A DNA stretch of 64,000 nt, from contig NC_043004.1 in assembly GCF_006345805.1 (NCBI RefSeq), positions 682,001 to 746,000 of the forward strand, written 5' to 3'. The DNA comes from Octopus sinensis. Lineage: Eukaryota. The notes under the pieces are model-generated. The model did no database searches. It was given only the letters and a program-made list of their open reading frames with translations, and was not told where the DNA came from. Shown piece after piece: positions 3,164 to 64,000 of this stretch; position 1 is the stretch's first letter; each line of letters starts with the position of its first letter. The translations under genes were made by a program, and so were the position numbers.

Positions 3164-3165
3164 TT

Positions 3166-3261
<96 letters not shown>

Positions 3262-17640: not shown

Positions 17641-17719
17641 AACCGTTCGAAGCCAACGAAGGAACCTGTGCATAGACGCTTGACCATTTAGAAATAGCAA
17701 CAGAAACGTAAGTACTGTC

Positions 17720-25650: not shown

Positions 25651-25694
25651 GTTTTATCAGGTATGAGGTCTGAAAGAAATAAAACCCCTTAGAT

Positions 25695-28600: not shown

Positions 28601-28710
28601 GCCCGCCAAAATCTCAATTCGCTCACCATTTTCTAGAAATTCGCCCATAGCCCACCTGTAATTTGAACTCGCCTACCGGTGGGCGATATCGCCCACTTTG
28701 GGAAGCTATG
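25695..28710 (-). mobile_element. hAT (Buster-subfamily) DNA transposon with both ends present
   Basis: TIRs CAGTGCTTCCCAAA and reverse complement CATAGCTTCCCAAA (12/14); 8-bp TSD CCTTAGAT (25687-25694) and CTTTAGAT (28711-28718) with the Buster NNNTANNN pattern. Confidence 0.9.
26105..27878 (-). pseudogene. hAT/Buster (ZBED5/ZBED8-like) transposase pseudogene
   Basis: MSPVTKIYRQYSSDYLLFGFIPSP*NCQLPMCLLCHKTLTNEAMKPSRLK; DES first catalytic D; ACASDGAPS; VYCLAHRQHL; C-terminal FPTSYLVESGF; several stops and frameshifts. Confidence 0.92.
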
Positions 28711-30985: not shown

Positions 30986-31093
30986 TAATTTTTTTTGTAC
31001 AAGTAGAGATAAATATATTTTTTTCAACGTGTAAATACTGACAGAACATCATATGTAGGACAAAATCCTTACAGAGCAGAAAAAAACTCAGTA

Positions 31094-31165
31094 ACCAGCC
31101 ATGAGACTCGAACTCACACCCCTTCAATTTCTGGTCAAAGTGCTTTACTAATTAAGCTAAGCTGC
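31094..31165 (-). pseudogene. tRNA-like sequence (tRNA pseudogene or orphan SINE head)
   Basis: GCAGCTTAGCTTAATTAGTAAAGCACTTTGACCAGAAATTGAAGGGGTGTGAGTTCGAGTCTCATGGCTGG: A-box-like TAGCTTAATTAG, B-box-like GAGTTCGAGTCTC, imperfect stems. Confidence 0.4.
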
Positions 31166-31324
31166 TTTACTGACAAATTCTTCTAGGGGTACAAATGAGG
31201 TGGGGATATCAAGAGACAATTATTTGTGTGAGGGAGATAGACAAAATTAAGTGAATTCACGGTTGAATCGGTTTTGATAATAATGAGGAGATCTGCTTAG
31301 TGAGAGTAGAACTGGGGCTAAACA

Positions 31325-31463
31325 GCACCATCACCAGCGTCAGCAGCAGCCTCAGCAACAGCAGCAGCATCACCACCAGAGCCACACCACCACCACCACC
31401 ACCACCACCATCAACTACAACAACAACAACAGTGCTATCTCCTCCATCCCCACCATCAAAACC

Positions 31464-31510
<47 letters not shown>

Positions 31511-31559
31511 CAGTGCCATCTCCTCCATCCCCACCATCAAAACCACCACCACCACCACC

Positions 31560-31591
<32 letters not shown>

Positions 31592-31720
31592 CAACAACAA
31601 CACTGCCATCTCCTCCATCCCCACCTTCAAAACCACCACCTTCACCAGTGCCATCTCTACCACGACGACGACCGCCACCATTAAAACCACCACCATCACC
31701 ACCACCACCACCACCACTAT
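31325..31720. repeat. Higher-order trinucleotide minisatellite: (CCA)n-(ACA)n-GTGCCATCTCCTCCATCCCCACCATCAAAA, about 3.5 units
   Basis: Fixed block of about 30 bp recurs at about 31432, 31512 and 31602. Confidence 0.9.
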
Positions 31721-32326
31721 GTGCACGAAGCATACACTGTGACACTCGCTTTCAAATCACAGAAAAAGAGATAAAATGAAGAGAAAAATACATCTCTAAA
31801 ACCAAAGTTTATGGATACGCATGATTGCACGCGTTATTTCATCCATGCGCAAGACACAGCGGAAGTAACGTGCAGGATTTCTTCTCGTATATTTGTATTA
31901 TTTGTATTGTTTTGTTTGTTTGTTGTTTGTTTTATCAGTTGGTTTTAGTGACTGTTAGTAAGCTGGTGAGTTTAGTATATACAGTTTTAGCAGTAAACTC
32001 ATACGTGACCAAGCGTAATCGGAAAGCCAGGAATGAGTGAGACACATGTTGACACATACACACACATACACACTCACACACACACACACGTACACACACT
32101 CAGACACTCGCGGTGATTACAACACTCACCGAAAACTCATCTTTGAGGATTATCTGATTGATGAAATACTTTCTAGAAGGACAACAGTGACAGTATCACC
32201 AACACGACCACCACGATCAAATAAATTGAACTATACTATTGAAAAAGATACACACAGGACATATATACAAAACCCAACTATCTACGTTACTGGATATGTA
32301 TGGAATTGATGTCAAATAACAACGTG

Positions 32327-40677: not shown

Positions 40678-43133
40678 AAATAATAGGTTATTCAGAGTAG
40701 ATCAGAAGAGATTCTATAAAGAAATAAATGGATAGTGTACCGATAAAAAGTTGATACCAGATAACAATGAAAGTCAAAGGTTTTGGAGTGACATCTGGAG
40801 CAAAGACAAAGAGCAGAAGAAGGATGCTGAGTGGTTGCAAGAACTGAAACAAACAGTAGTCTGTCCAAACCAGGCAGAACTAGTCATTTCAGTTAGAGAC
40901 GTGAAGGCAAAAACAGAGAAAAAAAATGGGTAACTGGAAGGCTCCGAGACTAGATGGAATTGAAAGCTACTGAATCAAAAGATTTGGTGAATGTCATGCA
41001 CGAATAGATGCACAACTCAACACCTTGTTAAATGCCGACCAAGTAACATCAGAGTGGTTGACATTGGGTAATACAGTGCTGTGCCGAAAAACATCGAAAA
41101 AGGCAATTCGGTAGAAAATTACCGGCCGATATCCTGTTTGCCACTTATGTGGAAATTATCGACTGGAATACTCGCAGAATCAATGTACGAACATCTGGAA
41201 CATCTGCCACATGAGCAGAAGGGTTGCAAGCGTAAGTTCAGAGGTACCAAGGATCAACTCCTGATAGAGAAAACTGTACTTAGAGACTGCAAGAGGGCGA
41301 AAAGTACCTTAGCCATGTCATGGATCGACGTAAGGTGTACAATATGATCCCACACTCTTGGATAATGGAATATATGAACCTATTTGGTATTGCATCGAAA
41401 GTTGAACGATCGCTTGAGAAAAGTATGGCGAATTCGCGGACAGACCTGACAGCGTACGAAAGAAGTTTAGGGACTGTAGAAATCAGGAGGGACATGTTCC
41501 AAAGGGACTGCCTGTCCCCACTGATCTTTGTACTGCGCTTGAAACCACTAACATTGATTCTGAGGAAAGTAAAAGCTGGGTATGTATTCAAAAGCTGCCA
41601 ACAAAAAGTCAACCATTTGTTATTCATGGATGACCTCAAACTTTATGGTAAAGATGAATTCCAAGTCAGTTCCCTCGTTGATACAGTGTATATTTTCAGT
41701 GCTAATATCATAATGGAGTTCGGACTAAGAAAGTGTGGTGTGTTAGTCTTGGAGAGAGGCAAAATCAAATGTATGGACGGGATAACGATACCGTCGGTGG
41801 AGGTTATGAAGCAGATAGAAGATACAGGCTAAAAGTACTTGTGGATTTTGTAAATGGATAAATTGATGGAGAAAGAAATGAGAAAAAATTAAGGTGGAGT
41901 ACTTGCACAGACTGAGACTGATCCTTAAGTCGAAATTAAACTGACGGAATAAGATTGAAGCTGTCAACACCTGGGCGGTTTCACTCCTTAGATATGGAGC
42001 AGGGGTAATCGCATGGACAGCAGATGAAGTAAACAGCTTAGACAGAAAGTCAAGGAAGTTGCTAACTAGATATGGGACACTCCACCCAAAAAGTGACACA
42101 GTCAGACTGTATGTACCAAGAAAAAGCGGGGGAAGAGAACTTATTGGATGCGAACACAGCATTAGAGCAGAAGAAAGCAACATAGCATGGTATGTAAAAT
42201 ATCCCACAGAACTGTCATTATTGGAAGTAGGAAGGTCAGGCTTGTGTAGGATGAAAAATTGCAAAGATAAAGCACTATATAAGAAATTGAAAACGAATGA
42301 AACTGAAAATAGGTGGGTAAAGAAAAGAATGCATAGACAATTCCATAGAGATGTTGAAGACAGACAGAAAAAAAGATGGCTCTGGATGACTAAACACGAT
42401 TTAAAACTGGAACGGAGGCTCTAAACTGTGCTTCTCAAGATCAAGCATTAAGAACCAATTACATCAAATACAGAATAGACAACACATCAGAAAGTGATAA
42501 GCGCAGAAATTTTGGACAAAATGGTGAAACCGTATGGCATATTAACAGTCAATGAACGCCACTAGCCCAGAAGGAATATAAGAGACGTCATGACAATATA
42601 GCATTGGACACTTTGCAACAAGTATGGACTTGACAGAGCAAAAATTGGTGCGAACATAAACCCGAAGGCATCATCGAAAATGATAATACAAAGATCCTAT
42701 GGGATTTTATGATTCAGTGCGACCATGAGATAGAGAATACCAAACGAGACATAGTGTTAGTTGAGAAGGAAACGATGCTGGATCATAGATATAGCATGCC
42801 CAGCTGACAACAAAGTATGCGATAAGGAAGAAAGGGAAGTCGAGAGATTTGACAGGTTAGCTTGGGAAGTTAAGCAGTTGTGGTCGATGAAAATGTTGGT
42901 AGTAGTACCAATAATTGTCGGAGCCCTGGGGACAGTGAGTAAAATTCATGAGAAGTACATGGAACAAATAGGGGCTGCTATAAGGGTGGAGCACTTGCAG
43001 AAAGCAGCACAGCTTGGAACCGCTCGAACACTCCGGATGGTGCTCGAAAAATAAGGGGTGCTACCTTAGTTCACTGGTAGTGAACAGCTGACACCGTAGT
43101 ACATCTCCAGTGTTAGAATCTGTGCAAAGTCAA
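40678..43133 (+). pseudogene. 5'-truncated R4/Dong-like non-LTR retrotransposon (RT, degenerate CCHC region, RLE), frameshifted
   Basis: NRLFRVDQKRFYKEING; ESQRFWSDIW; [14 protein letters not shown]; QRDCLSPLIF; NHLLFMDDLKLYGK (FMDD at 41623-41634); LHPKSDTVRLYVPRKSGGR; ILWDF..IIDIACPAD..VVPIIVGALG..LGTARTLRMVLEK*; (AAT)n at both ends. Confidence 0.93.
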
Positions 43134-50133: not shown

Positions 50134-50166
<33 letters not shown>

Positions 50167-50171
<5 letters not shown>

Positions 50172-50510
50172 AGGTTTGGAGATGATGTACAGGTATTATA
50201 TATTAGGAGAAATGAGGTAATCAGAAGATCGGATGGTTTATATTTACAGATATTTATTTATATATTACATTTTTTACATATATATCATATCAAATTGATA
50301 CACTCTTTGCAAACATTAGCGCAAACATTATTTTCAAATCAAAATAAGTTCCTTCGGAACTTATTTTGATTTGAAAACCCCACTAGAATGGGAGAAAGCG
50401 CTATGTTTTGCAAAGAGTGTATCAATTTGATATGATATATATGTAAAAAATGTAATATATAAATAAATATCTGTAAATAAAACCATCCGATCTTCTGATT
50501 ACCTCATTTC

Positions 50511-50520
<10 letters not shown>
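50167..50520 (-). mobile_element. (TA)n-flanked fold-back element with 3-nt loop and about 32-nt one-sided tail
   Basis: Arms about 50200-50352 and 50356-50520 centred on TTC (50353-50355); left arm has a deletion of about 20 nt; extension at 50167-50199 on one side only. Confidence 0.85.
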
Positions 50521-50593
<73 letters not shown>

Positions 50594-50680
50594 ATATACA
50601 TATATATACACACATACATATATATACATACATATATACACATACATATATATATATATATCCATGCACACACACGCACG

Positions 50681-50720
<40 letters not shown>

Positions 50721-51011
50721 TAATTAGAGATGAAACCACTATTAGGCAAGTCAACAGTGAAAAAACATAAGCCAATACATAAAAATTAATTTAAAATATA
50801 AAAGTTAAAATAAAAATTATTTAAATAATTTAAACTTATAAATTTATATATATATATACAATATATATATATATATAATGTATGTATGTATATTTTTATA
50901 TTTATATATTATTTATTAATTAATTATTAATCAATTAATTATTAATTTATTATTTTTTTTTAAATATTAAAAGTATTAAAAGTTTAATAAAAGATAAAGA
51001 GTATATATAAC

Positions 51012-51519
51012 AAAGTTAAGTTGTAAGATACTGCACGAGTGGAAATATATATGAAAGAAGGTTTGAAAATGTAATTTTAAAGCTGTTTATTCACTTGACC
51101 GGTTTCACATTTTTAGAAAAAGATTGTCAAGAGTAAAATGTAAAGCTTTATATAAGCTTTGTTGTGTTAAGGACTGGTTGTCACAAAAATATTACAATAC
51201 ATATATACACTCTTTGATGATAATACTGTGTATGTATATATATACTACCAAACAAACATGATTTGTATTGAGCTCCTAATACATTTTGTTGAATATTTTC
51301 TTAAATGCCTTCATTGTAAACTGTTTTTAACATTTTTTATTATTATTATTATTATCAAAGAATGTATATATGTATTTTATAACTTTTGTGACAACCAGTC
51401 CTTAACACAACAAAACTTATACAAAGCTTTACATTTTACTTTTGACAATCTTTTTCTAAAAAAGTGAAATCAGTCAAATGAATAAACATCTTTAAAATTG
51501 CATTTTCAAACCTTCTTTC
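51012..51519 (-). mobile_element. Fold-back Penelope-like derivative: about 175-bp inverted arms, about 40-nt one-sided tail, TA-flanked
   Basis: Arms start at 51053 (GAAAGAAGGTTTGAAAATG) and end at 51519; tail 51012-51052 matches the reverse complement of 62337-62375. Confidence 0.85.
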
Positions 51520-51532
51520 ATATATATATATA

Positions 51533-51915
51533 AGCGCAGGTGAAGCTGTGTGGTAAGAAGCTTGCTTCTCAACCACTTGGTTTTGGGTTCAGTCCCACTG
51601 CGTGGCACCTTGGGCAAGTGTCTTCTTCTATAGTCTCAGGTCCACCACAGCCTTGTGAGTGGATTTGGTAGACGGAAACCGAAATGAAGCCCATTATATA
51701 TATGTATATGCTTAAGTGTGTGTGTCTGTGTCTGTCTCCCCATCATCGCTTGACAACTGATGTTGGTGTGTTTACACCCCGTAACCCTGGCGGTGAGGCA
51801 AAAGAGACCGATAGAATAAATACTAGTCTTACAAAGAATAAGTCCTGGGGTCGATTTGTTCGATTAAAGGCCGTGCCCAGCATGGCTGCAGTCAAATAAC
51901 TCAAACAGTAAAAAA
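51533..51915 (+). mobile_element. SINE family A, full length
   Basis: GCGCAGGTGAAGCTGTGTGGTAAGAAGCTTGC...CCCAGCATGGCTGCAGTCAAATAACTCAAACAGTAAAA. Confidence 0.9.
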
Positions 51916-51945
51916 TATAATATATATATATAATGTACATTATAT

Positions 51946-52007
<62 letters not shown>

Positions 52008-52024
52008 TATATACATATAATGTA

Positions 52025-52278
52025 CGGACCGGGCTGCGTGTTTGTGTTCTTGAGCAAGGCACTTTATTTCACGTTGCTCCAGTTCACTCAGCTGTAGAAA
52101 TGAGTTGCGACGTCACTGGTGCCAAGCTGTATCGACCTTTGTCTTTCCTTGGATAACACTGGTGGCGTGGAGAGGGAGGCTGGTATGCATGGGCGACTGC
52201 TGGTCTTCCATAAACAACCTTGCCCGGACTTGTGTCTAGGAGGGTAACTTTCTAGGTGCAATCCTGGTCATTCGACCG
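52025..52278 (+). mobile_element. SINE related to family C, with a different 3' tail and no head
   Basis: GGACCGGG..GTGTTCTTGAGCAAGGCACTTTATTTCACGTTGCTCCAGTTCACTCAGCTG shared with family C; distinct 3' half ending TTTACCCTTTA. Confidence 0.75.
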
Positions 52279-52376
52279 AAGGGGTCTTTACCCTTTACAT
52301 TATGTGTATAAATGCACACACATGCACACATATACACATGTACACGTACATACATATACATATATATATATATATA

Positions 52377-52430
<54 letters not shown>

Positions 52431-52570
52431 AAGAGAAAAAGAGAGAGAGAGAGAGAGCAAGTAAACAAAACTGTTTCTGACACATAATGTTGATACAAGA
52501 TACGAAGGGCTGACTAATTTTATACCTATTAGGTTTTATATATATTATATATATATATATAATATATATA

Positions 52571-52605
<35 letters not shown>

Positions 52606-53719
52606 ACGCATATATGTGCAGACATTGTATTTATTCTAGTGCAGAACCAGTGATTCGCGACAACTTACTGCTTGAAGGAAAAGAAAAAAAGAAAAAAAAA
52701 GTGGCCGCCATGCTTTATTTCTTACTTTTTAAAATATATAAATGCATTAATGAAATTATCTCTTACGTCACTCCTCTTCATATTTATCGTGTGAGGGAAA
52801 TATTTGCCGCGATGCTCCAAAGCTTGAGCTGAACTAATCTAATCTATTTCTGCTGCTTGACAGGAGTCTGGCTTAAATGGATGCTCGTCGGTGGACAATA
52901 AATATAGAGTTTTGTCGGGGGGGGGGAGATCTGTCAGAATACTTGAAGCAACAACCATTGAAATATTATAACTAAAAATATATCGCCGACAAATGTTCAC
53001 AGAAGAGTAACTAATCTTTTCGAAAGTGAGAATTATTGAGCTTGGTCTACTGTAAATGTTGGTTTTTTGAATCTAGGAACACTTTAGGCAACAAAAAAGT
53101 TGTTTTTGGTTTTTAACTCACCTCCGCTCTAATCGACCAGACATGAATATTATCAAAGATGTTCTAACTATGACTGTCCCTCTATATTTATCTGGGTCTA
53201 CATTATCTAATGGATCATTTATTTAGATATAGTTGGGTTTGATTTAATGAGATTTAGCTTCTATTTCTATTGGGGGAAAGATTACATAGAGCTTCTTTCT
53301 TTGGCTCTGTCAGCAAAGAAGTAAAATTCAAAGGAGAAACAAATGATGTACATTGGTGTGTAGCCACGATATGTGTAATCACAAAACTGTCTACTCTTAT
53401 CACGTTGATATGTCGCCATTTTCAGACCCTTTTATACTCAACTCTCATGTGATTCAAATTCTTATTAATCTCCCAGAAATATAGAAATATGATTCTGTGA
53501 CTTCGAGTCACAGAAGATTCAGTTATATGTTACTAGTAAGAATTTTTTTTAATGCTTAGAAGTAAATCATAGCATATCAGTCGTCTTGGAAGAATCTTGG
53601 ACGTGGAATGACATTGTTTTCTGAGAAACAAAGTGACTGAAGAAATATTTGTTTCTAACTTCAGCACAAATCCACAAATTTGTAGCGAGGGGTTCTTCGG
53701 ATTAATCGACTACTCAGGT

Positions 53720-54130
53720 CTGTTATAAGCCCTAGGACTCTTAAGGTCGGAGTTTCATCCGGTTTTCATGGAGTATTAGTGACTGAAATTATAACACTTT
53801 TATCCTGGTTCGTCGCAGAGTTAACTTCCCAGCTATTCCTGGAACTTATTTACAGACTTGAGAGAAAGAAAATGAAGTGTTTTGCTCAAGAACACAGCAC
53901 ACCTCCCGATTGGGAAATCGAAACCAAGATTTTATCATCGTGAGTACAACACCCATACCACTAGGCCATGCAACTTTTCTTGTACTTACTGAAGCTTATT
54001 TCATCGACCTCGGAAGGATAATAGGCAAAGTGAACTTTGGTGGGATTTGAATTCTGAACATTAAGAGCCGAAACTAAATACCGAAAACCATTTGTACGAC
54101 GCTCTAGCGATTCCGTGCATCTACCGTCTT
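53720..54130 (-). mobile_element. Degraded SINE C (53720-53975) followed by SINE B (53990-54130)
   Basis: GAAGTGTTTTGCTCAAGAACACA..GAAATCGAAACC; ATCGACCTCGGAAGGAT..GGCAAAGTGAACTTTGG. Confidence 0.65.
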
Positions 54131-54149
54131 TAGGTCAAGAAACTTTAAG

Positions 54150-54385
54150 AATAGATGGTGATGCTTGGCCACATGCTTCGGTGCCAGCCTGAAAGCTGCG
54201 TAATGCGTGATGCAATAGAATGGACAGTGCAAGATACCAGAAGAGGAAAACCTAAGATTACTTGGTCGAAAACAATGAGGAGTGAAAGAAGAGATAATGT
54301 CTGGGCAGAGGCAGGAACAGAAGACAATACGGAGGAGAATACGCAGAGACCCTCTGGTACCAAGTTATGTTGGAGGGACAATCAG
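54150..54385 (+). pseudogene. RTE-clade LINE ORF C-terminal fragment
   Basis: LGHMLRCQPESCVMRDAIEWTVQDTRRGKPKITWSKTM matches the RTE W(L/F)GHVxR...RxRGRPKxTW motif. Confidence 0.6.
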
Positions 54386-55159
54386 TAACAATAACAAATT
54401 GCAGAAAATGTCTTAATTCATAACTAAAGCGTTTGTAAAATTTAGAAGGCTTTCTTTATCATATTCGAGTTTTAGTCATAGTTTTGGTTGCCGAATTTTA
54501 TGATGTTAATAAGTTCCATACTTTAAAGAAATATGTAGCATCGTATTTAAGCCATCAACGAAGTATTTAAGTAGTATCTAAGGAATCAAGGAAGCTAGTG
54601 TTATCTCAGTCTTCTCATTTCCCACTTATATTGAATCACTTGTCTTTTACTTATTCTCAGTGCAAAGGTTCCAATATTTAGTGAAGTGTTTTGACGCTAA
54701 AATATGAAAGCTGTAAGTGATTGAATAAAATACGTAGCAATGAGAAAAATGACTGCAGTAAGCTGGTAGGTATATATTTGAATGAAGATGAGATTATATT
54801 AAATAATAAAAAAACGAAATACACTGCCTGAATGGAGGTAATGTAAAGCTATATTAGTTATCTTTCCTTTTCATTTCGTCTCGATGCCTCAAATTATAGA
54901 GAAATTATAAGAACGGAGAAGAAGTCTTCTGGGCCACATCACAAGCAATATATAATTGAATCATGTATTTTCATTATGAATTAATTTTTCACTTTCATGA
55001 AGGAGTGGAGGAATTGTATTGAGGAAAATAAAATTTTCTCAGGGGTGTAAGAGGAACGTGAAGTGAAATGCTTTGATTAAAACTTGAAGCGACAACGCTT
55101 ACTTGGCACACGGAAAGCTGACATCTCGTTGTGCAGCATTTGCCATTATCGTGCTTTAT

Positions 55160-55560
55160 ACATTTGTCTTTTAATTGTCTCAGTCACTGGAGTGCGGCCA
55201 TGATGGAGCACCGCCTTGAAATGTTTAGTCGAACAAATTGACTCCGGAACTTTTTAATTAAAATTGGTACTTATTCAATCTGTAATTTTTTTTGCCGATC
55301 CGCTAATGTTTCGGGGACGTAAACAAGCCAACACCGGTCGTCAAACGATGAGAGAGAACAAACACAAAGACACACACAACAAACAGATACACGCTCACAT
55401 ATGAAAGGCTTCCATACAGTTTCCATCAACCAAATTCCCTCACAAGGTATTCATTGGCCCGGAGTTATGGTGAAGACTAAGGTTCCGCACAGTAAGACTG
55501 AACCCGAATCCGCATAGTTGCAAAACGATCTCCTTCACCACACGGCCACGCTTGCGCTTA
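55160..55560 (-). mobile_element. SINE family A (diverged)
   Basis: GTGCGGCCATGATGGAGCACCGCC...CCGCTAATG..GGGGACGTAAAC...ACTGAACCCG. Confidence 0.75.
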
Positions 55561-55659
55561 TTTATAGGAGTTTTTTTTCTTCTTCACAAAGTATGCTTGG
55601 CTCTACATCGCATCTCTGTTAAGTTGCTGGACTAAATATCTCATAGCCTTACTGATCAA

Positions 55660-56250
55660 AATGCTTAGCGGTATTTTGTCTGCCGTCACGTTCTGAGTTT
55701 AAATTCCGCCCAGGTCGACTTCGCCTTTCATCCTTTCGGGGTCGATTAAATAAGTACCAGGGGTCGATATAATCGACTTAATCCGTTTGTCTGTCCTTGT
55801 TTGTACTCTTTGTGTTTAGCCCCTTGTGGGTAGTAAAGAAATAGAAATAGGTATTTCGTTGGACTTTTCATTCTGAGTTCAAATTCTGCCGAGGTTGACT
55901 TCGCCTGTCATCATTTCGAGGTCGATGAAATAAGTATCAGTTGCGTACTGGTGTCGATGCCATCGATTTACTTCCTCTCCCGAAATTGCTGGCCTTGTGC
56001 CAAAATTTGTAACCGATATTTAGTACTAATATGGCGGCGAGCAGGCAGAATCGCAACTGCGCCGGAAAAATTGCTTAGCGGCATTTCTTCTGATATTACG
56101 TTCTGAGTTTAACTGCCGCTGGGACTATCTTTGCTTTTCATTATTTGGGGTCGATAAAATAAGTACCAGTTAAGCACTGGGGTAGATGTAATTGACTTAT
56201 CCTCTCCCACAAACTTGCTGATCTTATGCCAAAATTTATAACTAATATTT
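55660..56250 (+). mobile_element. SINE family B tandem dimer (55660-55995) plus a further copy (56033-56250)
   Basis: Junction GTAAAGAAATAG-AAATAG-GTATTTCG at about 55835-55860, as in the 7.2-7.8 kb trimer. Confidence 0.85.
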
Positions 56251-56699
56251 GGTTATAGTCTCTAGTTTTAAGTAAGCCTCAAGCGAAGTCTTTTGTAAAA
56301 TATTAGCAGCAAAAAATGCTAGTATTTTTTATTCAGAAAATTCAAGATTTTGTAGATCTGAAAGAAATCAATAATATATACTAACTCTGAAAGTGAAATA
56401 TTTTCTTTTAGAATAGACAGAACAGTGTATCGTAAGTTTTATTTTTTTTAAAACTAGAATCATTGTTTAATAAACAATACAACAGAAGATTTAGCTGAAG
56501 AAATTAAAAGAAGATTTAGTTGAAGAAATATTGCTTAGATGACGGAGATGGAATCTAAGTAACTATCTTCTAGATTCCTTAGTTTCCATTTCATTCTTTC
56601 GTATTTTTAGGATGTTTTCATTCCTCTTAGAGCGATAAACTAGATGCCAGATTCATATGGAGGAGATGCAATGCGCTAATCCTTTATCCTAATTCCGTA

Positions 56700-57048
56700 T
56701 TTTATCTTTTATCCTTCACTTGTTTCAGTCATTTGACTGTGGCCATGCTGGGGCACTGCCTTCAAGATATTTTTTCGATTGAATCGACTCCAGGACTGTT
56801 TATTTTTTTTTAAAGTCTGGTACTCTGGTACCTATTCTATCCGTCTCTTTTGCCGAACCGCTAAGTTACGGTGACGTAAACACGCCAGCACCGGTTGTCA
56901 AGTGGTGGTAGGGAGAAACACACAGAAACGCGCGCACACACATATACATACACACACACAACCCACAAGTTTCTTTCAGTTTCCACCTACCAAATCCCCT
57001 CACAAGGCCTTGGTCAGTTCGAGGCTAGAGTAGAAGACACTTGTCCTT
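56700..57048 (-). mobile_element. SINE family A lacking the head
   Basis: Family tail and body blocks. Confidence 0.85.
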
Positions 57049-58354
57049 CCAATGATTACAGTGTAGAAATGAGGTAGAGGTCGAATTTCTTTTCTATCAA
57101 TGAAAGACATTTGCATCACTAAATCCCATTTTCTCTCCACAAAAAAAAAAACAGAACAAAAATACACAAGGCTTTTGTCTATCCTGGAATCAAGTGATAG
57201 AGATTATAACATATTTCCGGCGAACCTATCCTATCATTCCTTATCGATTCTGACATGTAAGCAATTCACGCGCCTTGAACAAGGCATTAACTCACTCAGT
57301 CTCGAATATTCTCGTCTACAAACCCCTGTTATTGTTGTTGTTGCTGCTGTTTGGTGTGAGTAAGCTGGTTTTAGAGGAGAAAGAGCAACGTCCATGAACT
57401 TTTGCCGAGCAATCCAAATTCCGGTGGGTTGGAGGAGGGAAAGCGAATGCTTTACTCACGGATTAAAGTTATAGAAATAGGGAGCAACGCACATCAAGAT
57501 ATCGAGATAGGCACAAACTGGAGACTGGTCTGAATTCTTAGCAGCAAATTCTGGTCTACTAAAAGCCCCTAAGGTTCAGTGAATGGTGTTAAATCGAACA
57601 ATGCATTAAATCAGCCATTCGAAAACATGATTGTATCGCAGTATAGGAAACAGAATTATTTCTGTGATTAGAAAAAGAAACAATAACAATAAAAAAAACC
57701 CAAAGAAAACAAAAACAAAAAACAAAGCAAAATCAACCATTTCTTCTCGTTTACCATTTTGTTTCCGTGGTGCAAATATTTGGTGTTGATTATATTCTTG
57801 TAGGTTTGGCACATATACCAAGCCTGAATATCTGCTTTCTGCTTGGAAGCTTTTAGTCATAATCAATATTACTGCAAACCTATTCGTCCGTTCAATGCTA
57901 TAGATTTCTCAAAATATCCAAGATAATCAAATATGCCATCAGTCCTATGATATCATAAAGTCGAGTCCCAAAAATATTTCGTTTTGTAAACTATTCATAT
58001 TCGTTATAAGGTTTCTTCTACATGTTATAAATGCAACGAACACCTATATTGCTTGGAAGACATACATTTAAACAAATTCCCTCGCTTTTTCCATCCTATA
58101 TTTATCAATATCTTTATCTATGTCTTCTTATTCACTAACTTTGCATTATTTTTCCTTATCTTTGAAAAGTTTCAAAATTCATTCCTAATACATGGCAGTT
58201 TCTTTCGTCACTAATGGAAGCGGGGAAAAATACGTCTTCACTGTTTTATTATCAGAATCTGAAGGTAACGAAGTTATTCATGCAGCCAGAAAAATTTATA
58301 TTTCTCAATATCTGTTCCACTGCATAAAATGAGTCCATTATCAAGTGACATTTT

Positions 58355-58417
58355 CATATGTATATATGCATACATACATACATACATACATACATACATA
58401 CATACATACATACACAC

Positions 58418-58494
<77 letters not shown>

Positions 58495-58500
58495 TGTATG

Positions 58501-58555
<55 letters not shown>

Positions 58556-58694
58556 GTATATATATATAAATATATATATTATATACATGTATATATATAT
58601 GTATATATATATATATGTATGTATATACATACATATGTATATAAATATATATATATATATTTATATGTTTGTATTATGTATGTATATATGTATA

Positions 58695-58725
<31 letters not shown>

Positions 58726-58887
58726 CTCATATAATGCATGCGCACATACATACAAAACATTGTTTTGACACCTTAGATATTAATTAAATGGCATACACAC
58801 GCGCGCACACAAGCACACCTGTATATGTATATGGCAGTTTGTGCATCTGCGTGTTTGAGTGTGTATGTGCAAATTGTAAGTATGTAC

Positions 58888-58918
<31 letters not shown>

Positions 58919-58928
58919 TGTATGTATG

Positions 58929-59005
<77 letters not shown>
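58355..59005. repeat. Compound (ATAC)n/(AT)n/(GTAT)n microsatellites
   Basis: Direct reading. Confidence 0.9.
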
Positions 59006-59006
<1 letters not shown>

Positions 59007-59219
59007 TGAAATAAACAACAGAGATGCTTTGCTCCACGCAGAAACTTGCAGAAGCTACTCAGAAGTCTTGCAAGCCCTTTGAAATCCTTTGTAATTCTGG
59101 AAACCCTTCCATATCGTCAGCTGGTGTCTCAGGGCTAGAAGTGTTTTGCACTTTAGCTTGAACGCTTCGCCTGAATGGGGCAGCAAGGACTGAACTAATC
59201 TTCATCTACAGAAGAGTTC

Positions 59220-59335
59220 TACTTGCGGTCTCTTATCAGTCCCAGCCATCTTGATCTAGTTTCAGTTGCCGTGCCTATCTCCTTGATGGCTTTCTTCAGT
59301 TGTCTGGGTTCCAGATCTATCTTCTGTCGGATATA
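59220..59335 (-). pseudogene. Possible RTE-type LINE extreme C-terminus
   Basis: YIRQKIDLEPRQLKKAIKEIG..RSRWLGLIRDRK* resembles the RTE YIDxLxxD..ELxxAMxDRxxWR motif. Confidence 0.4.
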
Positions 59336-60587
59336 TACAATCAGATATATAATAATCGATTAAGGAAATAGAAAATGGTTTCGGTATTAGTCTTTATTGT
59401 GTGCGACAATTGTTTCGGCCGATCCTGCGATTGTTCCTTATGGGTGGGATTTTATGCATCGTATTGTGTTGCATCAATTTTGAGGTTTGGGTCACACAAG
59501 GTACATTCATACATAAAGTTGTGTCTCGCTAAAAATTTTGAGTTCAAGCGGTCATGTTGTTATTTGCTCGCTTCAGTTAGGAAATGAAGCATTGCCACAA
59601 TTGTCCTTATCATTCACACATTACCGTGTGCGAATAATATCCTTAAGGTCAACATTTACTCACTCATGACCACTTCTAGGGTTTATCACTAACTCAGTTT
59701 TTAACCAAATAAGTTGATGTTTACATTTTTTCAGCGACACAATTTGAAAATTGCTTTGGCAAAAAAAAAGTTTCAGTAAAATATGTGAGGTCAAAAACGG
59801 GAGAGTAACGTTTGAAATCGACTTTCAGTTCAAATATATTTTTTTAAAATAGAGCTATATTTTATTCTGGCTTATATGATAGATCTCAACGACAGGAATC
59901 TATCCATGTTACTTATATGCAAAAATATTCAGCAGAAAAAAGTAATGGGATAAAAAACCGTCGAAAAAAGGGAGATTGACGTCGGAAATCTACTTTGACT
60001 CCATATATTACGCTTCTTTCAAAAGAAAATTACAAATTTAACTTTGCTCATAAATCTCGACTACAGGAATACCATGATGTTAATTATATATAAAAAATTA
60101 AAATAAAGAACTGCTGGGGCCAAATGTGCCGAAAACAGTGGTAACACCTAAAATCTAATTCAGAAACTAAACATTTTGTTTTTGTTTTGCTCATTTGATA
60201 GAATACATCCAGACGAGTGTCGTGATGCTAATCTTTTCAAAGAAGATTCAAAATGAAAAAACTTATTATATAAGCTAAATGAGCCACAAGGATGTAAAAC
60301 AATTTTCAAGTAATATTATTACTTTTCCATTGTAATATTAAATATTGATAACTAATAATAGTAAATAATTATGCATATAAACTTATAAACTGTAGACAAG
60401 AAAGAAAGAAAAAATAAAAATATAAAGATATGCAGGCTAGAGTATATGGGGGAGATATATAGATAGGATGAGACCTGTTAAGGAAAGATTAGATTGCATG
60501 AATGTTTAAAGCAAGGGAAGAATACTACACTTGCTAACACGGGTTAGGATGCGTATAGGCCCTTACACACACATTCGCACACAAGCA

Positions 60588-60653
<66 letters not shown>

Positions 60654-60659
<6 letters not shown>

Positions 60660-61416
60660 AAAAAAGGTTTGAAAATGCAATTTAAACGATGTTTATTTAC
60701 TTAATCGGTTTCACTCTTGGTAAAAGATTGTCAAAAGTTACATTTAAGGAAACATTGAATAATATGGGTTCAAAAAAGTTTTTTACATAATTGTCACATT
60801 GAATATTATGCATTCAAAAAAGTTTTTACATAATTGTCCATTGGATATTATGAATTCAAAAATGTTTTTTTATACATAATTGTCACATTACATGTATAAA
60901 TATAGTGTTTGGTAACAGAGAAGTTCAATAGTGTGATGAGAATATTTGGGAAAATTTGGCAGAAAAGGATAAAACAAATATATTATTGGGAATTGGTTGC
61001 GTTAATTATTGGTTGTCGCAAATTGTCACATTACATGTATATATATACAATCTTCGGTATATATATACAGCCTTTTGACAGCAAAAATTAAAATGGATTT
61101 TTTATACATCTCAGAATATTTTAAGTACAAGGCGAGAATATGTTTTTACTGACCTGTTGGTATTAGCAGAAAGGCTGATCTGAGAGAACAGAGGAAGTAA
61201 CCAATGTGGTGTATACTTCCCCTTTATGCATGAATGATTTTGGGGTTATCAGGAGGTTAGTATGCGGGTGTGAATAGATGTGTCCGTGCCCGCTGGTCAG
61301 ATAGCGTCTGTTTGTCACACACATATATACACACACATGCTGTATGTGTGTATTGTATGTGTGTATATATATGCTAGGTGTATTTGTGTGATATTTATAT
61401 TATGTATGTATGTGTG

Positions 61417-61449
<33 letters not shown>

Positions 61450-62370
61450 GTGTGTGTATGTGTGTTATATATCTGTGTATGTTATATATAGATACATATT
61501 ATATTTGTGTGCTGTGTGTATATGTGATATATGTGGGTGCGTTGTGTGTGGGTGTGTGTGTTCTGTGTGTGTGTGTGTGTTGTTTGTATGTGGTGTGTGT
61601 TTGTTTACTATGTGTGTGTGTGTGTGTGTTGTTGTTGTTGTTGTGTGTGTGTGTGTGTGTGTATATATGTGTGTGACAAACAGACGCTATCTGACCAGCG
61701 GGCACGGACACATCTATTCACACCCGCATACTAACCTCCTGATAACCCCAAAATCATTCATGCATAAAGGGGAAGTATACACCACATTGGCTACTTCCTC
61801 TGTTCTCTCAGATCAGCCTTTCTGCTAATACCAACAGGTCAGTAAAAACATATTCTCGCCTTGTACTTAAAATATTCTGAGATGTATAAAAAATCCATTT
61901 TAATTTTTGCTGTCAAAAGGCTGTATATATATACCGAAGATTGTATATATATACATGTAATGTGACAATTTGCGACAACCAATAATTAACGCAACCAATT
62001 CCCAATAATATATTTGTTTTATCCTTTTCTGCCAAATTTTCCCAAATATTCTCATCACACTATTGAACTTCTCTGTTACCAAACACTATATTTATACATG
62101 TAATGTGACAATTATGTATAAAAAAACATTTTTGAATTCATAATATCCAATGGACAATTATGTAAAAACTTTTTTGAATGCATAATATTCAATGTGACAA
62201 TTATGTAAAAAACTTTTTTTGAACCCATATTATTCAATGTTTCCTTAAATGTAACTTTTGACAATCTTTTACCAAAGAGTGAAACCGGTTAAGTAAATAA
62301 ACATCGTTTAAATTGCATTTTCAAACCTTTTTTCTTATATAATCCCACTCGTGCGATACCCCACAACTCA

Positions 62371-62375
<5 letters not shown>
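60654..62375 (+). mobile_element. 1.7-kb palindromic Penelope-like derivative: about 680-bp near-identical inverted arms, about 330-bp simple-repeat spacer, 39-nt one-sided tail, (TA)n on both sides
   Basis: About 60654-61331 versus 61662-62340; I found 2 substitutions and 2 homopolymer indels; mirrored ORFs 60909-61091(+) and 61900-62082(-) are identical; termini homologous to the 51-kb element. Confidence 0.92.
62254..62294 (+). ncRNA. Hammerhead-like motif, U3:A8 core variant (paralogues at 60699-60738 minus, 51093-51134 minus, 51438-51479 plus)
   Basis: ACUU-UUGACAA-UCUUUUACCAAAGAGU-GAAA-CCGG-UU-AAGU; 4-bp stem I; palindromic stem III ACCGGU. Confidence 0.6.
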
Positions 62376-62416
<41 letters not shown>

Positions 62417-62599
62417 GAGCGGAGTAAATGATTTGACCGCAAAATACCGAAAGCACAAGTTGCCCTGGGTTAGACATATCGCAAGGTTCATAGACAACAG
62501 GTGGACCCGCACAGGTGCCGAAGAGTGTTCAAAAGATTGAAAAAAGGCTCCTTGGAAGACCTCCACAACGACGGGAAGACATTTTAGTTAAGTAATTTG

Positions 62600-63720
62600 G
62601 GTCAAGCTGGGAAAGAATGGTGCAATCAAGACAAGATTGGAAGAGAATTGTGATCAGTGGTGTATAACAACATCTGATGGTCTGTTCGGTACTGTGCATC
62701 AAGTATTAGGTTGATGCTTCTTGTTCCTGGACTGCAAATGTGCACCTTTCGAAGTGATAGACGCCTTTGATTAACAGCGTTTCTGTCATCCCGGAGCTTT
62801 CTGCTTGCATATCCATACATGGTCTTCTGCCGATACGCATTCATCTTTTCATATGTTGCGTTAGAATCGAGCAACTTCTTTGGGAATGCATTGAAGGTTA
62901 TCAGACAGGGAATGTTTCTCGAGGTGCTGCTTTCCATGTCCCATGATGTTATCTGCTTTGTGTATGCAAACTTGGTCAAAGGATGCACTTCGATACTTGG
63001 TGGGTAGAAGATGTTGTCGAAAGGATATCATGTGACAACCAAAAGCTGCTTTTGGTTGTCACATCACATCCCTTAAACCGCTGCTTTCTTATTTTCGTTT
63101 TAGGTAGAGGTGGTCTATTTCAATATTGATGTGAAAATTACTTGTGCTGGTCAATATCTTCTGGGTCTTCACACCAATGGTTCGAATCTCATCAAGCATT
63201 CAGTCAAGCAGCTCAAATGTTGGTGTAAGTACTGGTACTGCAAGCACATTTTGGGCCACTGTTTTATTGAATGCAGAGAGTTCCGAGGTTCATCTTTTTC
63301 GTATCCAGTTGTTATATTCTTTTGTGATGTTTCCTGTTAGAGGTACCATCGCAAGATATGTTTTCATGCCCTTATGCGCCAGTAACACTCCTCATCAAAT
63401 AGAGTAGAAACAGTTAAGCCGATGGTGGAGATGCTGCTAGTCTGGTTTGTAGTTTTCATAACTATAAAGCAACATTTATTCAATCCTGTATATTTTGAGA
63501 ATCTTGTAAGCTGGTTAAGAATTTTTTCATCTCATACCTACTCCTGATATACAGTTTCAAGTCATCCACATAAGAACAGAGTTTAATTTTTGCTATTTCT
63601 GTCTCCTTGTGAGCCAATGAGATACTCAACATAAATGACAAGGGGTTTACTAGCATTCCACAGAGGTTGGACCCCTTGGAATATATCTCTACGATAGTGT
63701 GTTTTATCAGTGACAATATT
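62600..63720 (-). pseudogene. Degraded R4/Dong-like RLE-class retrotransposon RT region (separate family)
   Basis: LCSYVDDLKLY (YVDD at 63561-63572); KEYNNWIRKR*TSELSAFNKTVAQNVLAVPVLTPTF..DEIRTIGVKTQKILT..FHINIEIDHLYLKRK*ESSGL; RQKTMYG; LILDAQ. Confidence 0.8.
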
Positions 63721-63786
63721 ATTTCTTGTATTTAACTTTGACGGTGACTCAAGATAAAGTCAGATCAGTTATACGTTGATTATAGT

Positions 63787-64000
63787 ATGTATGTATATAT
63801 AAGTGGTCTTCCTATGATGCTGACATGCAGTCTCTGTGCAAGACCCTGCCTCAATAAAGCTGGACACATGAGTCATCTTCGTAGTCATAAAGCGAGGCAG
63901 ATGAGTGACAACCTGGCCACTGGTGGTGGTGTAACACACCATACTAATCATATCTGTCGTGTATGTGGAAGAGACTGTAATTCGGCAAGAGGACTTAAAC
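63787..64000 (+). CDS. Partial ORF with two C2H2-type zinc fingers, running off the window edge (possibly TE-derived)
   Basis: MYVYISGLPMMLTCSLCARPCLNKAGHMSHLRSHKARQMSDNLATGGGVTHHTNHICRVCGRDCNSARGLK...; CX2CX12HX3H finger plus the start of a second; no stop before the edge. Confidence 0.65.
   Translation, partial: MYVYISGLPMMLTCSLCARPCLNKAGHMSHLRSHKARQMSDNLATGGGVTHHTNHICRVCGRDCNSARGLK

What the first reader, a model, noticed from the sequence alone, without database searches (positions are those of the whole stretch)
60654..62340. Giant near-perfect palindrome (about 680-bp arms, about 99% identical)
Seen: arms differ by only about 2 substitutions and 2 homopolymer indels and enclose a 330-bp TG/TA-rich spacer. 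Each arm contains a minisatellite of about 43 bp in three copies (about 60765-60890). Inference: such identity implies very recent insertion or arm-to-arm gene conversion. If transcribed it would give about 680 bp of dsRNA, a strong ADAR-editing or siRNA substrate, which is relevant in a lineage known for extensive A-to-I editing. In DNA it is a potential cruciform or fragile site.
Basis: partly seen in the sequence, partly recalled or inferred. Interest (0 to 1): 0.72.

Follow-up and report, generated by a model that had tools for sequence, protein, structure and literature searches.

The report
Long-armed foldback repeat in octopus DNA
The giant palindrome is real, and it is most likely a non-coding "foldback" jumping-gene relic in an octopus genome: two smaller foldbacks lie nearby, one a clear relative, so it is an ordinary kind of repeat with one odd unexplained feature, not a new biological system.

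Summary
Arms 60652-61337 and 61654-62341 (686/688 nt) differ by 2 transitions and 2 one-base homopolymer indels (99.4%). They enclose a 316-nt spacer and each carries a 44-bp x3.1 tandem repeat.

It is not a one-off. A 468-bp foldback at 51053-51520 shares the outer ~150 nt of the arm (70-77% identity). A third foldback, also flanked by TA runs, at 50137-50581 shares only the tip motif. Protein hits place the window in Octopus.

Best reading (confidence 0.6): a non-autonomous, long-TIR foldback DNA transposon sitting in a (TA)n tract. It is built like Drosophila Tetris, and the small copy plays the role of its MITE partner DAIBAM. The spacer is almost pure TG on one strand, so it looks like a one-sided microsatellite expansion.

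One feature is unexplained. A conserved 34-nt tail lies outside one arm in both copies. It resembles a Helentron/HINE 3' end in position but has no hairpin.

No coding capacity, autonomous partner, empty site or further copy was found: none in 148 kb of Octopus loci, and the public contig and protein collections searched gave nothing. Mobility, target-site duplication and superfamily are therefore inferred.

The dsRNA potential holds in silico (-1230 kcal/mol), but transcription is untested. The 316-nt spacer argues against a strong cruciform or fragile site. Interest is low to moderate.

The parts
60591..60657 (.). (TA)33 microsatellite flanking the left arm
   Evidence: TRF, 100% matches; sequence
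60658..61337 (+). Left arm (long TIR), 680 nt, begins AGAAAAAAGGTTTGAAAATG
   Evidence: Alignment to the right arm: 99.4%, 2 substitutions + 2 indels; 31% G+C
60658..60800 (+). Terminal (flanking) domain of the arm, shared with the small foldback at 51053-51520
   Evidence: blastn and nhmmer hits to 51053-51212 and 51417-51519; 70% identity over ~150 nt, 77% over the first 100 nt; alignment A2
60752..60889 (+). 44-bp tandem repeat, 3.1 copies, each carrying the AATTGTC(A)CATT motif
   Evidence: TRF; the exact 12-mer AATTGTCACATT occurs three times per arm and nowhere else in the window
60890..61309 (+). Inner domain of the arm (35% G+C). No match elsewhere in the window; matches in the 148 kb of other Octopus loci were not seen for L002-L007 (L008 was searched only with the TIR and tail profiles)
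   Evidence: no protein homology
61310..61337 (+). Microsatellite-like inner tip of the left arm: (CA)n(TA)n(CA)n
   Evidence: sequence
61338..61653 (.). Spacer/loop, 316 nt of degenerate (TG)n/(TA)n, strongly strand-asymmetric (98 TG vs 1 CA dinucleotides), contiguous with the (TG)n tip of the right arm
61654..62335 (-). Right arm (long TIR), 682 nt, reverse complement of the left arm
62102..62240 (-). Mirror copy of the 44-bp tandem repeat
   Evidence: TRF: period 42, 3.1 copies
62336..62341 (.). TATATA between the right arm and the tail. It may be a target-site duplication partner of the last TATATA of the left (TA)33, or an internal linker
   Evidence: sequence; alignment
62342..62375 (+). 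One-sided 34-nt tail, ATCCCACTCGTGCGATACCCCACAACTCAACTTT, conserved next to the small element too
   Evidence: 26/34 identical to 51012-51044 (minus strand); 0 of 20000 shuffles reach the score; the opposite flanks are unrelated; alignment A1; no hairpin
62375..62413 (.). (TA)19 microsatellite after the tail
   Evidence: TRF
51053..51520 (-). Second family member: small foldback (MITE-like). Arms 51053-51225 and 51347-51520, 92% complementary, 121-nt loop. It lies in the opposite orientation to the big element
51012..51044 (-). Tail of the small element, separated from its arm by ATATATAT
50137..50581 (.). Third TA-flanked foldback. Arms ~50195-50352 and 50356-50515 with a 3-nt centre. The left tip TTGGAAGGTTTGGAGATG resembles the family tip; the right tip is missing. 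Possibly a distant relative

Best explanation
The palindrome is one copy of a non-autonomous, foldback-type (long terminal inverted repeat) DNA transposon family in an Octopus genome, sitting in a (TA)n tract.

Shown:
- Two 680-nt arms at 99.4% identity.
- Each arm is modular: a ~150-nt terminal domain, then a 44-bp tandem-repeat domain, then a ~420-nt inner domain.
- A non-coding, TG-rich middle region.
- A second, 468-bp foldback 9 kb away that shares only the terminal domain and the same sharp tips (GAAARAAGGTTTGAAAATG) on all four arms.
- TA runs on both sides of every copy.

Inferred:
- The copies were mobilised in trans by a transposase that binds the terminal domain. The repeated AATTGTCACATT motif (three exact copies per arm) may provide extra binding sites.
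- The long arms arose by TIR elongation or inverted duplication within the element. They are either young or kept alike by arm-to-arm conversion.
- The 316-nt spacer is a one-sided expansion of the (TG)n at the inner tip of the right arm, so the ancestor probably had a very short loop, like the third foldback with its 3-nt centre.
- The element is now most likely inert DNA. If read-through transcription crosses it, it would fold into a ~684-bp RNA hairpin.

Not explained by this model: the conserved 34-nt tail outside one arm.
For: - Palindrome anatomy.
- Family membership and sharp shared termini. nhmmer finds exactly four arm tips in the window, E 1e-36 to 1e-41 (these four tips are the sequences the profile was built from, so the E-values are by construction; the informative result is that nothing else matched).
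- Terminal-domain identity is 70-77%, while the arms within each element are 92% and 99.4% identical. This is the pattern expected for separate elements of one family.
- No coding capacity. A six-frame arm query found nothing among 5.8e9 proteins. Rfam gave only sub-threshold hits in microsatellite sequence.
- The repeated 12-mer is exclusive to the arms.
- A third TA-flanked foldback has a similar tip.
- The architecture matches the published foldback element Tetris and its MITE partner DAIBAM: a flanking domain, a tandem-repeat domain, an inner domain and a non-coding middle, with only the TIR tips shared with the MITE (PMC4079207).
- The window is from Octopus.
Against: - Mobility is not demonstrated. 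No empty site, no unambiguous target-site duplication (the flanks are low-complexity TA) and no autonomous partner were found.
- There are only two clear copies and one possible copy, all within 12.3 kb. None occurs in the other 50 kb of the window or in 148 kb from three Octopus genomes. None was found in the metagenome or GTDB contig collections.
- A plain cut-and-paste TIR model does not predict the one-sided conserved tail.
- Repbase and Dfam could not be consulted.
Confidence: 0.6

Rival explanations
1. It is a non-autonomous Helentron derivative (a HINE, DINE-1-like), moved by rolling-circle transposition. The asymmetric ends, with the 5' inverted repeat at the very end and the 3' inverted repeat followed by a ~40-nt tail, together with the central tandem repeats and microsatellite, are the HINE layout. 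The arms would be grossly elongated subterminal inverted repeats.
For: - The right arm ends 40 nt (6 nt of TA plus the 34-nt tail) before the end of the conserved sequence. Published HINEs have the 3' subTIR 38-60 bp from the 3' end (PMC4067079).
- The tail is conserved in both copies and on one side only.
- The element carries tandem repeats and a central microsatellite, as HINEs do in oysters and flies (PMC7492417; PMC4067079).
- The tail ends in a T-run (CTTT).
Against: - The tail has no palindrome or stem-loop. DNA folding gives -0.1 to -0.4 kcal/mol with z +0.5 to +0.7, no better than shuffles. The 3' palindrome is a defining HINE feature.
- HINE subTIRs are 11-15 bp, not 173-680 nt.
- The flanks are TA runs, not the TT target, and the 5' end has no T string.
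- No Rep/helicase coding sequence is nearby.
- Canonical Helitron ends (5'-TC, 3'-CTRR) are absent in both orientations (sequence).
Confidence: 0.12
2. It is not a transposon but a locally generated inverted duplication. A break or stalled fork in the unstable (TA)n/(TG)n microsatellites was repaired by fold-back (hairpin-primed) synthesis or template switching, copying adjacent sequence in reverse. The neighbouring foldbacks would be older products of the same process or local duplicates.
For: - All three palindromes sit inside or next to long (TA)n tracts, and all lie within 12.3 kb. None was seen in 148 kb elsewhere.
- The centre of the big one is microsatellite sequence.
- Arm identity is very high.
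Against: - Fold-back duplication defines only one outer boundary. Here both outer boundaries of both elements coincide to the base with the same tip sequence.
- The big and small elements share the terminal domain at only 70-77% identity, while each is internally 92-99% identical. The foldback state therefore predates their divergence or arose repeatedly on the same unit.
- No flanking homology exists beyond the tail.
Confidence: 0.12
3. It is an assembly or library artefact: a fold-back chimeric long read, or a mis-join of two copies at the (TG)n tract.
For: - Two of the four arm differences are homopolymer-length differences, which is typical of long-read error.
- The centre is a microsatellite, where assemblers can mis-join.
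- No independent assembly of the locus could be retrieved.
Against: - Fold-back read artefacts give arms of arbitrary extent that meet at a point. Here the arms stop exactly at family-defined termini next to TA runs, and they enclose a 316-nt non-palindromic spacer.
- Two other foldbacks of the same design are present, with diverged arms of 92%. That divergence cannot be an artefact.
- The window has no gaps or N.
Confidence: 0.06
4. The big and small foldbacks are the two ends of one old ~11.4-kb element (51012-62375). Its true terminal inverted repeats would be tail + TA + terminal domain, each end folded back on itself, and the interior has since been overwritten by SINE and LINE insertions.
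For: - The two tails face outward and the elements are in inverted orientation. This arrangement has a 1-in-4 chance for two independent copies.
- The family is otherwise rare.
Against: - No Pfam domain occurs in any ORF of 45 aa or more between the two elements.
- No other inverted homology lies inside or outside them, apart from SINEs.
- The two 'ends' differ ~4-fold in length.
Confidence: 0.05
5. It is, or has become, a functional hairpin-RNA locus whose transcript feeds the siRNA pathway or soaks up ADAR. This could be true in addition to a transposon origin.
For: - The predicted RNA hairpin has 684 bp and -1230 kcal/mol.
- In metazoans including O. bimaculoides, A-to-I editing mainly targets young repeats that can pair with a nearby inverted copy (PMC9989829).
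- About half of O. bimaculoides TE insertions are reported as transcribed in some tissue (PMC12988792).
Against: - There is no evidence of transcription, a promoter, conservation or small RNAs.
- The locus lies among TE debris.
- No Rfam family matches.
Confidence: 0.03

Closest known systems
Tetris (foldback element) and DAIBAM (MITE) of Drosophila virilis (PMC4079207)
   Same: - Long TIRs built of an outer flanking domain, a tandem-repeat domain and an inner domain.
- A non-coding middle domain.
- No ORF and few structurally complete copies.
- A small MITE shares only the final portion of the TIRs.
- No autonomous partner has been found.
   Different: - No sequence similarity, and a different phylum.
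- The tandem-repeat unit is 44 bp here against ~220 bp in Tetris.
- Tetris has clear 8-9-bp target-site duplications. Here the flanks are (TA)n, so a duplication cannot be read.
- Tetris has no one-sided tail.
Galileo, and the FB elements of Drosophila (foldback-like elements of the P and MULE superfamilies)
   Same: - TIRs of hundreds of bp to more than 1 kb with internal tandem repeats. In Galileo these carry secondary transposase-binding sites (as cited in PMC4079207).
- They promote rearrangements by ectopic pairing (my background knowledge).
   Different: - The superfamily is known for those elements because they have a transposase. Here there is none.
- Their terminal motifs and target-site duplications (7 bp and 9 bp) cannot be matched here.
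HINE / DINE-1-like non-autonomous Helentrons (PMC4067079; Cg_HINE in oyster, PMC7492417)
   Same: - Asymmetric ends, with the 3' inverted repeat ~40 nt inside the 3' end.
- Central tandem repeats plus a microsatellite.
- Non-coding.
- Common in molluscs.
   Different: - No 3' stem-loop in the tail.
- Inverted repeats of 173-680 nt instead of 11-15 bp.
- TA-run flanks rather than the TT target.
- No Helentron partner seen.
Micron, the (TA)n-microsatellite-targeting element of rice (from memory: Akagi et al. 2001; not checked here)
   Same: A non-coding element flanked on both sides by (TA)n microsatellites.
   Different: Micron is ~390 bp, is not a long palindrome and is from a plant. The comparison rests on recollection only.
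Human palindromic AT-rich repeats (PATRR11/22; from general knowledge, and the review PMC7999016 listed)
   Same: An AT-rich, near-perfect palindrome several hundred bp long, with the potential for hairpin or cruciform formation.
   Different: PATRRs have essentially no spacer and are not known to be transposons. Here a 316-nt spacer separates the arms. The third foldback at 50137-50581, with its 3-nt centre, is closer to a PATRR in this respect.

Membership tests
Foldback-type (long-TIR, non-autonomous) DNA transposons | Long terminal inverted repeats make up most of the element | tested here: met
   1362 of 1678 nt are arms, at 99.4% identity
Foldback-type (long-TIR, non-autonomous) DNA transposons | TIRs are modular and contain internal tandem repeats | tested here: met
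   44-bp x3.1 array in each arm; terminal, repeat and inner domains
Foldback-type (long-TIR, non-autonomous) DNA transposons | Non-coding middle domain with no transposase | tested here: met
   The spacer is a degenerate microsatellite. Six-frame arm ORFs have no homologue at E<=1
Foldback-type (long-TIR, non-autonomous) DNA transposons | Target-site duplication of fixed length flanks the TIRs | tested here: inconclusive
   Any duplication of 2-8 nt made of TA fits. For example, TATATA flanks both elements, and ATATATAT flanks the small one perfectly against 7/8 for the big one. The low-complexity flanks prevent a decision
Foldback-type (long-TIR, non-autonomous) DNA transposons | Dispersed copies at unrelated loci and empty sites (mobility) | tested here: inconclusive
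   Two clear copies and one possible copy, all within 12.3 kb. None in 148 kb of Octopus loci. No whole-genome search was possible
Foldback-type (long-TIR, non-autonomous) DNA transposons | An autonomous partner shares the TIR tips | not testable with these tools
   No Octopus genome could be searched by DNA. Nothing coding lies nearby
MITE | Small (<~800 bp), non-coding, with TIRs, in many homogeneous copies | tested here: inconclusive
   The small element (468 bp) fits by size and structure. The big one (1.7 kb) does not. Copy number is unknown
HINE / Helentron non-autonomous elements | Subterminal inverted repeats, with the 3' one 38-60 bp from the 3' end | tested here: met
   The right arm ends 40 nt before the end of the conserved tail in the big copy, and 41 nt before it in the small one. 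The repeats are 173-680 nt, however, not 11-15 bp
HINE / Helentron non-autonomous elements | A short palindrome (stem-loop) in the 3' tail | tested here: not met
   DNA folding of both tails gives -0.1 to -0.4 kcal/mol with z-scores +0.5 to +0.7
HINE / Helentron non-autonomous elements | Insertion into TT without a target-site duplication, with T strings at both ends | tested here: inconclusive
   The 3' end is CTTT, but the 5' end is (TA)n-A/T-GAAA, and the flanks are TA runs. No empty site is available
HINE / Helentron non-autonomous elements | A Rep/helicase(/endonuclease) partner with the same ends | not testable with these tools
   No searchable Octopus genome. No such domain between 52 and 60.5 kb
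Canonical Helitron | 5'-TC and 3'-CTRR ends, a hairpin ~11 nt from the 3' end, insertion between A and T | tested here: not met
   The ends read AGAAAA/TGAAAG and CTTTA/CTTTG in one orientation, and AAAGTT and TTCT/TTCA in the other
Tc1/mariner IR-DR group | TA target-site duplication, ~200-250-bp IRs with direct repeats, CAGT-type tips | tested here: not met
   A TA duplication is compatible, but the tips are GAAARAAGG, not CAGT/ACAGT-type. The tip consensus is from my own knowledge
Polinton/Maverick derivative | 5'-AG...CT-3' tips, 6-bp target-site duplication, long TIRs, 15-20 kb with pPolB and integrase | tested here: not met
   The big element has AG...CT tips and a possible TATATA duplication, but the small one has TG...CA tips, and there is no coding content. 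The feature list is from my own knowledge
hpRNA / endo-siRNA or ADAR-substrate locus | A transcribed inverted repeat yielding small RNAs or clustered A-to-G mismatches | not testable with these tools
   Only the fold could be computed. No expression data were available

The most novel reading that the evidence does not exclude
The tailed foldbacks represent an undescribed kind of mobile element in cephalopods. It would have asymmetric ends (inverted repeats plus a conserved, hairpin-less 3' tail) and would home specifically to (TA)n microsatellites. It would be neither a classical cut-and-paste TIR transposon nor a Helentron/HINE. The near-identity of the arms would then reflect a single-strand, hairpin-templated transposition or repair cycle.
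Probability: 0.08. Interest if true: 0.55.

Novelty: new member of a known kind. Interest (0 to 1): 0.27.

Why it matters
If the reading is right, this is routine repeat annotation: an unclassified foldback and MITE family in Octopus, a genome whose DNA transposons are poorly catalogued. It has three modest points of value.

1. Long, nearly perfect inverted repeats are the best natural substrates for ADAR hyper-editing and for siRNA production. In a lineage with heavy A-to-I editing, a catalogue of such foldbacks would help separate repeat-driven editing from recoding.

2. The family sits in, and may generate or target, (TA)n tracts. This bears on why octopus genomes are so rich in microsatellites.

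3. The one-sided tail is a small anomaly. With genome-wide copies in hand, it could reveal the transposition chemistry.

Tried and rejected
**Searches for more copies**
- Exact and gapped TIR patterns in metagenome contigs and in GTDB genomes: 0 hits.
- Window ORFs from the arms, spacer and right junction looked up in public assemblies: not on record.
- A six-frame concatenate of arm and tail ORFs against 5.8e9 proteins: nothing at E<=1.
- Seven ~20-kb loci from three Octopus genomes, fetched via hAT-like proteins. They were scanned with nhmmer profiles of the tip and tail, with a fuzzy tip motif, and (L002-L007 only) with blastn of the whole elements: no copy.
- An RT-based route gave only relatives at 55% identity or less, from another animal.
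- Literature text search for the tip and tail strings: none for the tip; the 10-mer tail hits are unrelated primers.

**Readings rejected**
- HINE membership: the tail has no hairpin.
- Canonical Helitron, Tc1/mariner and Polinton, by their termini.
- A small-RNA gene as the insertion target: no Rfam hit on the tail; only sub-threshold hits in microsatellite sequence.
- The hAT element in the window as a partner: its TIRs (TAGATCAGTGCTTCCCAAAC-type) are unrelated, and the motif hit at 28716 is a chance match just outside it.
- Two tail-to-tail retroposon copies: all four arms have intact identical 5' tips, and the relatives are palindromic without a central microsatellite.
- The composite 11.4-kb element: no coding content and no further homology.

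**Technical failure**
- A Pfam scan of raw six-frame DNA references failed because stop codons are not accepted.
Full report
**1. Observation**

The palindrome exists as described.
- The left arm, 60652-61337, aligns to the reverse complement of 61654-62341. Of the aligned columns, 684 are identical, with 2 substitutions and 2 one-base gaps (99.4%).
- The substitutions are T60705 vs C62288 and A61200 vs G61791. Both are transitions.
- The gaps lie in a T-run and an A-run.
- The outermost six bases of each arm are TATATA, which is self-complementary. The arms proper are therefore 60658-61337 and 61654-62335.
- The spacer is 316 nt (61338-61653).
- Each arm contains a 44-bp repeat in 3.1 copies (60752-60889 and its mirror 62102-62240).
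- (TA)33 lies directly left of the structure and (TA)19 lies 40 nt to its right.
- It is the longest and cleanest inverted repeat in the 64-kb window, and the window has no N.

**2. It has relatives nearby**

A sensitive self-search with the arm found a second foldback at 51053-51520.
- Its arms are 173 nt and 92% complementary, with a 121-nt loop.
- It shares the outer ~150 nt of the big element's arm: 70% identity overall and 77% over the first 100 nt.
- All four arm tips start at the same base with GAAARAAGGTTTGAAAATG, directly after a TA run.
- A profile of the tips finds only those four tips, the sequences it was built from, and nothing else in the window.

Further inward the two elements are unrelated. 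The big arm continues with the 44-bp array and a 420-nt inner domain of 35% G+C. That inner domain matches nothing else in the window or in the other Octopus loci searched with it, L002-L007.

A third palindrome at 50137-50581 has arms of about 158 nt and a 3-nt centre, and is embedded in (TA)n. It has a left tip, TTGGAAGGTTTGGAGATG, that resembles the family tip (13/16), and it lacks the right tip. I take it as a possible distant relative. The motif count is biased, because I widened the pattern to include this element.

**3. Organism and context**

- The hAT-like pseudogene at 25.7-28.7 kb has its best protein hits, at 80-86% identity, in Octopus bimaculoides, O. sinensis and O. vulgaris.
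- The neighbourhood is TE debris. It holds at least 20 copies of a ~350-bp SINE, RT fragments and LINE-like sequence immediately right of the palindrome.
- No Pfam domain occurs in ORFs of 45 aa or more between 52 and 60.5 kb.
- I could not establish whether the locus lies in an intron.

**4. What it is**

The anatomy is that of a foldback-type non-autonomous DNA transposon. Long modular TIRs (terminal domain, tandem-repeat domain, inner domain) surround a non-coding middle.

The closest described analogue is Tetris of Drosophila virilis (PMC4079207).
- Its TIRs consist of a flanking domain, a tandem-repeat domain and an inner domain.
- It shares only the final portion of its TIRs with the MITE DAIBAM.
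- Both lack a known autonomous partner.

That paper also records two views relevant here. [quoted passage not shown] In Galileo, the tandem repeats within the TIRs carry extra transposase-binding sites.

Here the 12-mer AATTGTCACATT occurs exactly three times per arm and nowhere else in the window. This makes it a candidate binding motif, but that is inference.

The arms have no coding potential.
- A six-frame query of the arms and tails found nothing among 5.8 billion proteins.
- Rfam gave no match at gathering thresholds; the sub-threshold hits lie in microsatellite sequence.

**5. The spacer**

The 316-nt spacer has T162 G107 A39 C8, with 98 TG dinucleotides against 1 CA. It runs straight on from the (TG)n(TA)n(TG)n inner tip of the right arm. 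The left arm ends in the complementary (CA)n(TA)n(CA)n.

The simplest reading is a one-sided expansion and decay of the right arm's microsatellite. The ancestor would then have been an almost spacer-less palindrome like the third foldback. This is inference.

**6. The unexplained tail**

Outside the right arm of the big element lies TATATA and then 34 nt, ATCCCACTCGTGCGATACCCCACAACTCAACTTT, followed by (TA)19.

The small element has the same arrangement on its corresponding side.
- Its sequence there is ATATATAT followed by TTCCACTCGTGCAGTATCTTACAACTTAACTTT.
- The two tails are 26/34 identical, and 0 of 20,000 shuffles reach that score.
- The sequences at the equivalent position on the other side of the two elements are unrelated.

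So the conserved unit is asymmetric: arm, loop, arm, TA, tail.

This geometry recalls Helentron-derived HINEs. In those, the 3' subterminal repeat lies 38-60 bp from the 3' end, and they have central tandem repeats and a microsatellite (PMC4067079; PMC7492417). But the defining 3' stem-loop is absent from the tail. Folding gives -0.1 to -0.4 kcal/mol, no better than shuffles. In addition, the inverted repeats are 10-50 times too long and the flanks are TA, not TT. I therefore do not file the element as a HINE.

Other ideas fared as follows.
- A target small-RNA gene: no Rfam hit.
- The two tailed foldbacks as the two ends of one old 11.4-kb element, since their tails face outward: nothing coding and no further homology lies between them.
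- Canonical Helitron, Tc1/mariner or Polinton termini: they do not fit.

**7. Mobility is inferred, not shown**

I could not search an Octopus genome by DNA.
- Pattern scans of metagenome and prokaryote contigs found nothing.
- Exact-ORF look-ups found nothing.
- 148 kb of Octopus sequence from three species contained no copy (scans).

Three foldbacks within 12.3 kb and none elsewhere is a real cluster. It is compatible with local hopping, with local duplication, or with a locus-specific process at unstable TA tracts.

The target-site duplication cannot be read, because every flank is (TA)n. TA, TATATA and an 8-mer all fit.

**8.

- *Arm identity.* It indicates a recent arm duplication or arm-to-arm homogenisation. 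It does not date the insertion, because TIRs are not rebuilt at each transposition. For comparison, the small element's arms are 92% identical.
- *dsRNA.* If either strand is transcribed, the fold pairs 683-684 positions arm to arm, at -1230 and -1173 kcal/mol against about -375 for shuffles. Published surveys, including O. bimaculoides, find that A-to-I editing mainly hits young repeats able to pair with a nearby inverted copy (PMC9989829). About half of the TE insertions of that species are reported to be transcribed in some tissue (PMC12988792). The prediction is reasonable but untested here.
- *Cruciform or fragility.* In yeast, breakage and fork stalling fall steeply once the spacer exceeds about 8 bp (PMC8053094). 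Distance between repeats also lowers rearrangement induction (PMC10164571, abstract). A 316-nt spacer therefore argues against a strong fragile site under normal conditions. The third foldback, with its 3-nt centre, is the better candidate.

**9. Artefact**

A fold-back read or library chimera would give arms of arbitrary length meeting at a point. Here the arms stop at family-specific tips next to TA runs and enclose an asymmetric spacer. Two other foldbacks of the same design have diverged arms.

A mis-join at the (TG)n centre cannot be excluded without reads. I give that 0.06.

**10. Verdict**

The palindrome is real and ordinary in kind. It is most likely a member of a previously uncatalogued foldback and MITE family of Octopus (confidence 0.6). 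It has one small anomaly, the one-sided tail, which a genome-wide copy survey would resolve. Interest is 0.27.

Noticed in passing
window 50137-50581: A third palindrome: arms of about 158 nt, a 3-nt centre (AAGTTCC TTC GGAACTT), embedded in long (TA)n on both sides. The left tip resembles the family tip and the right tip is missing. Because it is nearly spacer-less, it is a better cruciform candidate than the reported one.
   Followed up: partly
window 50137-62413: All three TA-flanked foldbacks lie within 12.3 kb. None occurs in the remaining 50 kb of the window or in 148 kb of other Octopus sequence, so this is a local cluster of unknown cause.
   Followed up: partly
window 832-1235 and 3139-3542: An inverted pair (404 nt, 95%) separated by 1.9 kb. 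It consists of two copies of the 3' end of a retroelement, each ending in a long (ATA)n/(ATG)n tail. It is unrelated to the finding.
   Followed up: partly
window 25690-28712 (minus strand): A hAT-like (ZBED8/FAM200-type, DUF4371) transposon pseudogene with one in-frame stop at 27345 and ~20-nt imperfect TIRs. It is 87-89% identical at the DNA level to paralogues in three Octopus genomes.
   Followed up: partly
window, e.g. 51536-51930, 4022-4412, 2882-3163, 17265-17641: A ~350-400-bp SINE is present in at least 20 copies at 62-86% identity. One copy abuts the small foldback across a 13-nt TA run.
   Followed up: no
window 31091-31167 (minus strand) and 31257-31779: A tRNA-Ser(AGA) gene or SINE head lies next to a G/C-rich low-complexity stretch. 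That stretch reads as Gly/Val-rich on one strand and Pro/Thr-rich on the other, and it is the G+C peak of the window.
   Followed up: no
window 41320-42424 and 62414-64000: RT-bearing LINE fragments. The one at 41.3 kb has only relatives at 55% identity or less in the protein collection. The sequence right of the palindrome carries a YVDD motif and C2H2-like fingers.
   Followed up: no
window 60789, 60878, 61021 (and mirror 61959, 62102, 62191): The exact 12-mer AATTGTCACATT occurs three times per arm and nowhere else in 64 kb. It may be a protein-binding motif of the element.
   Followed up: partly
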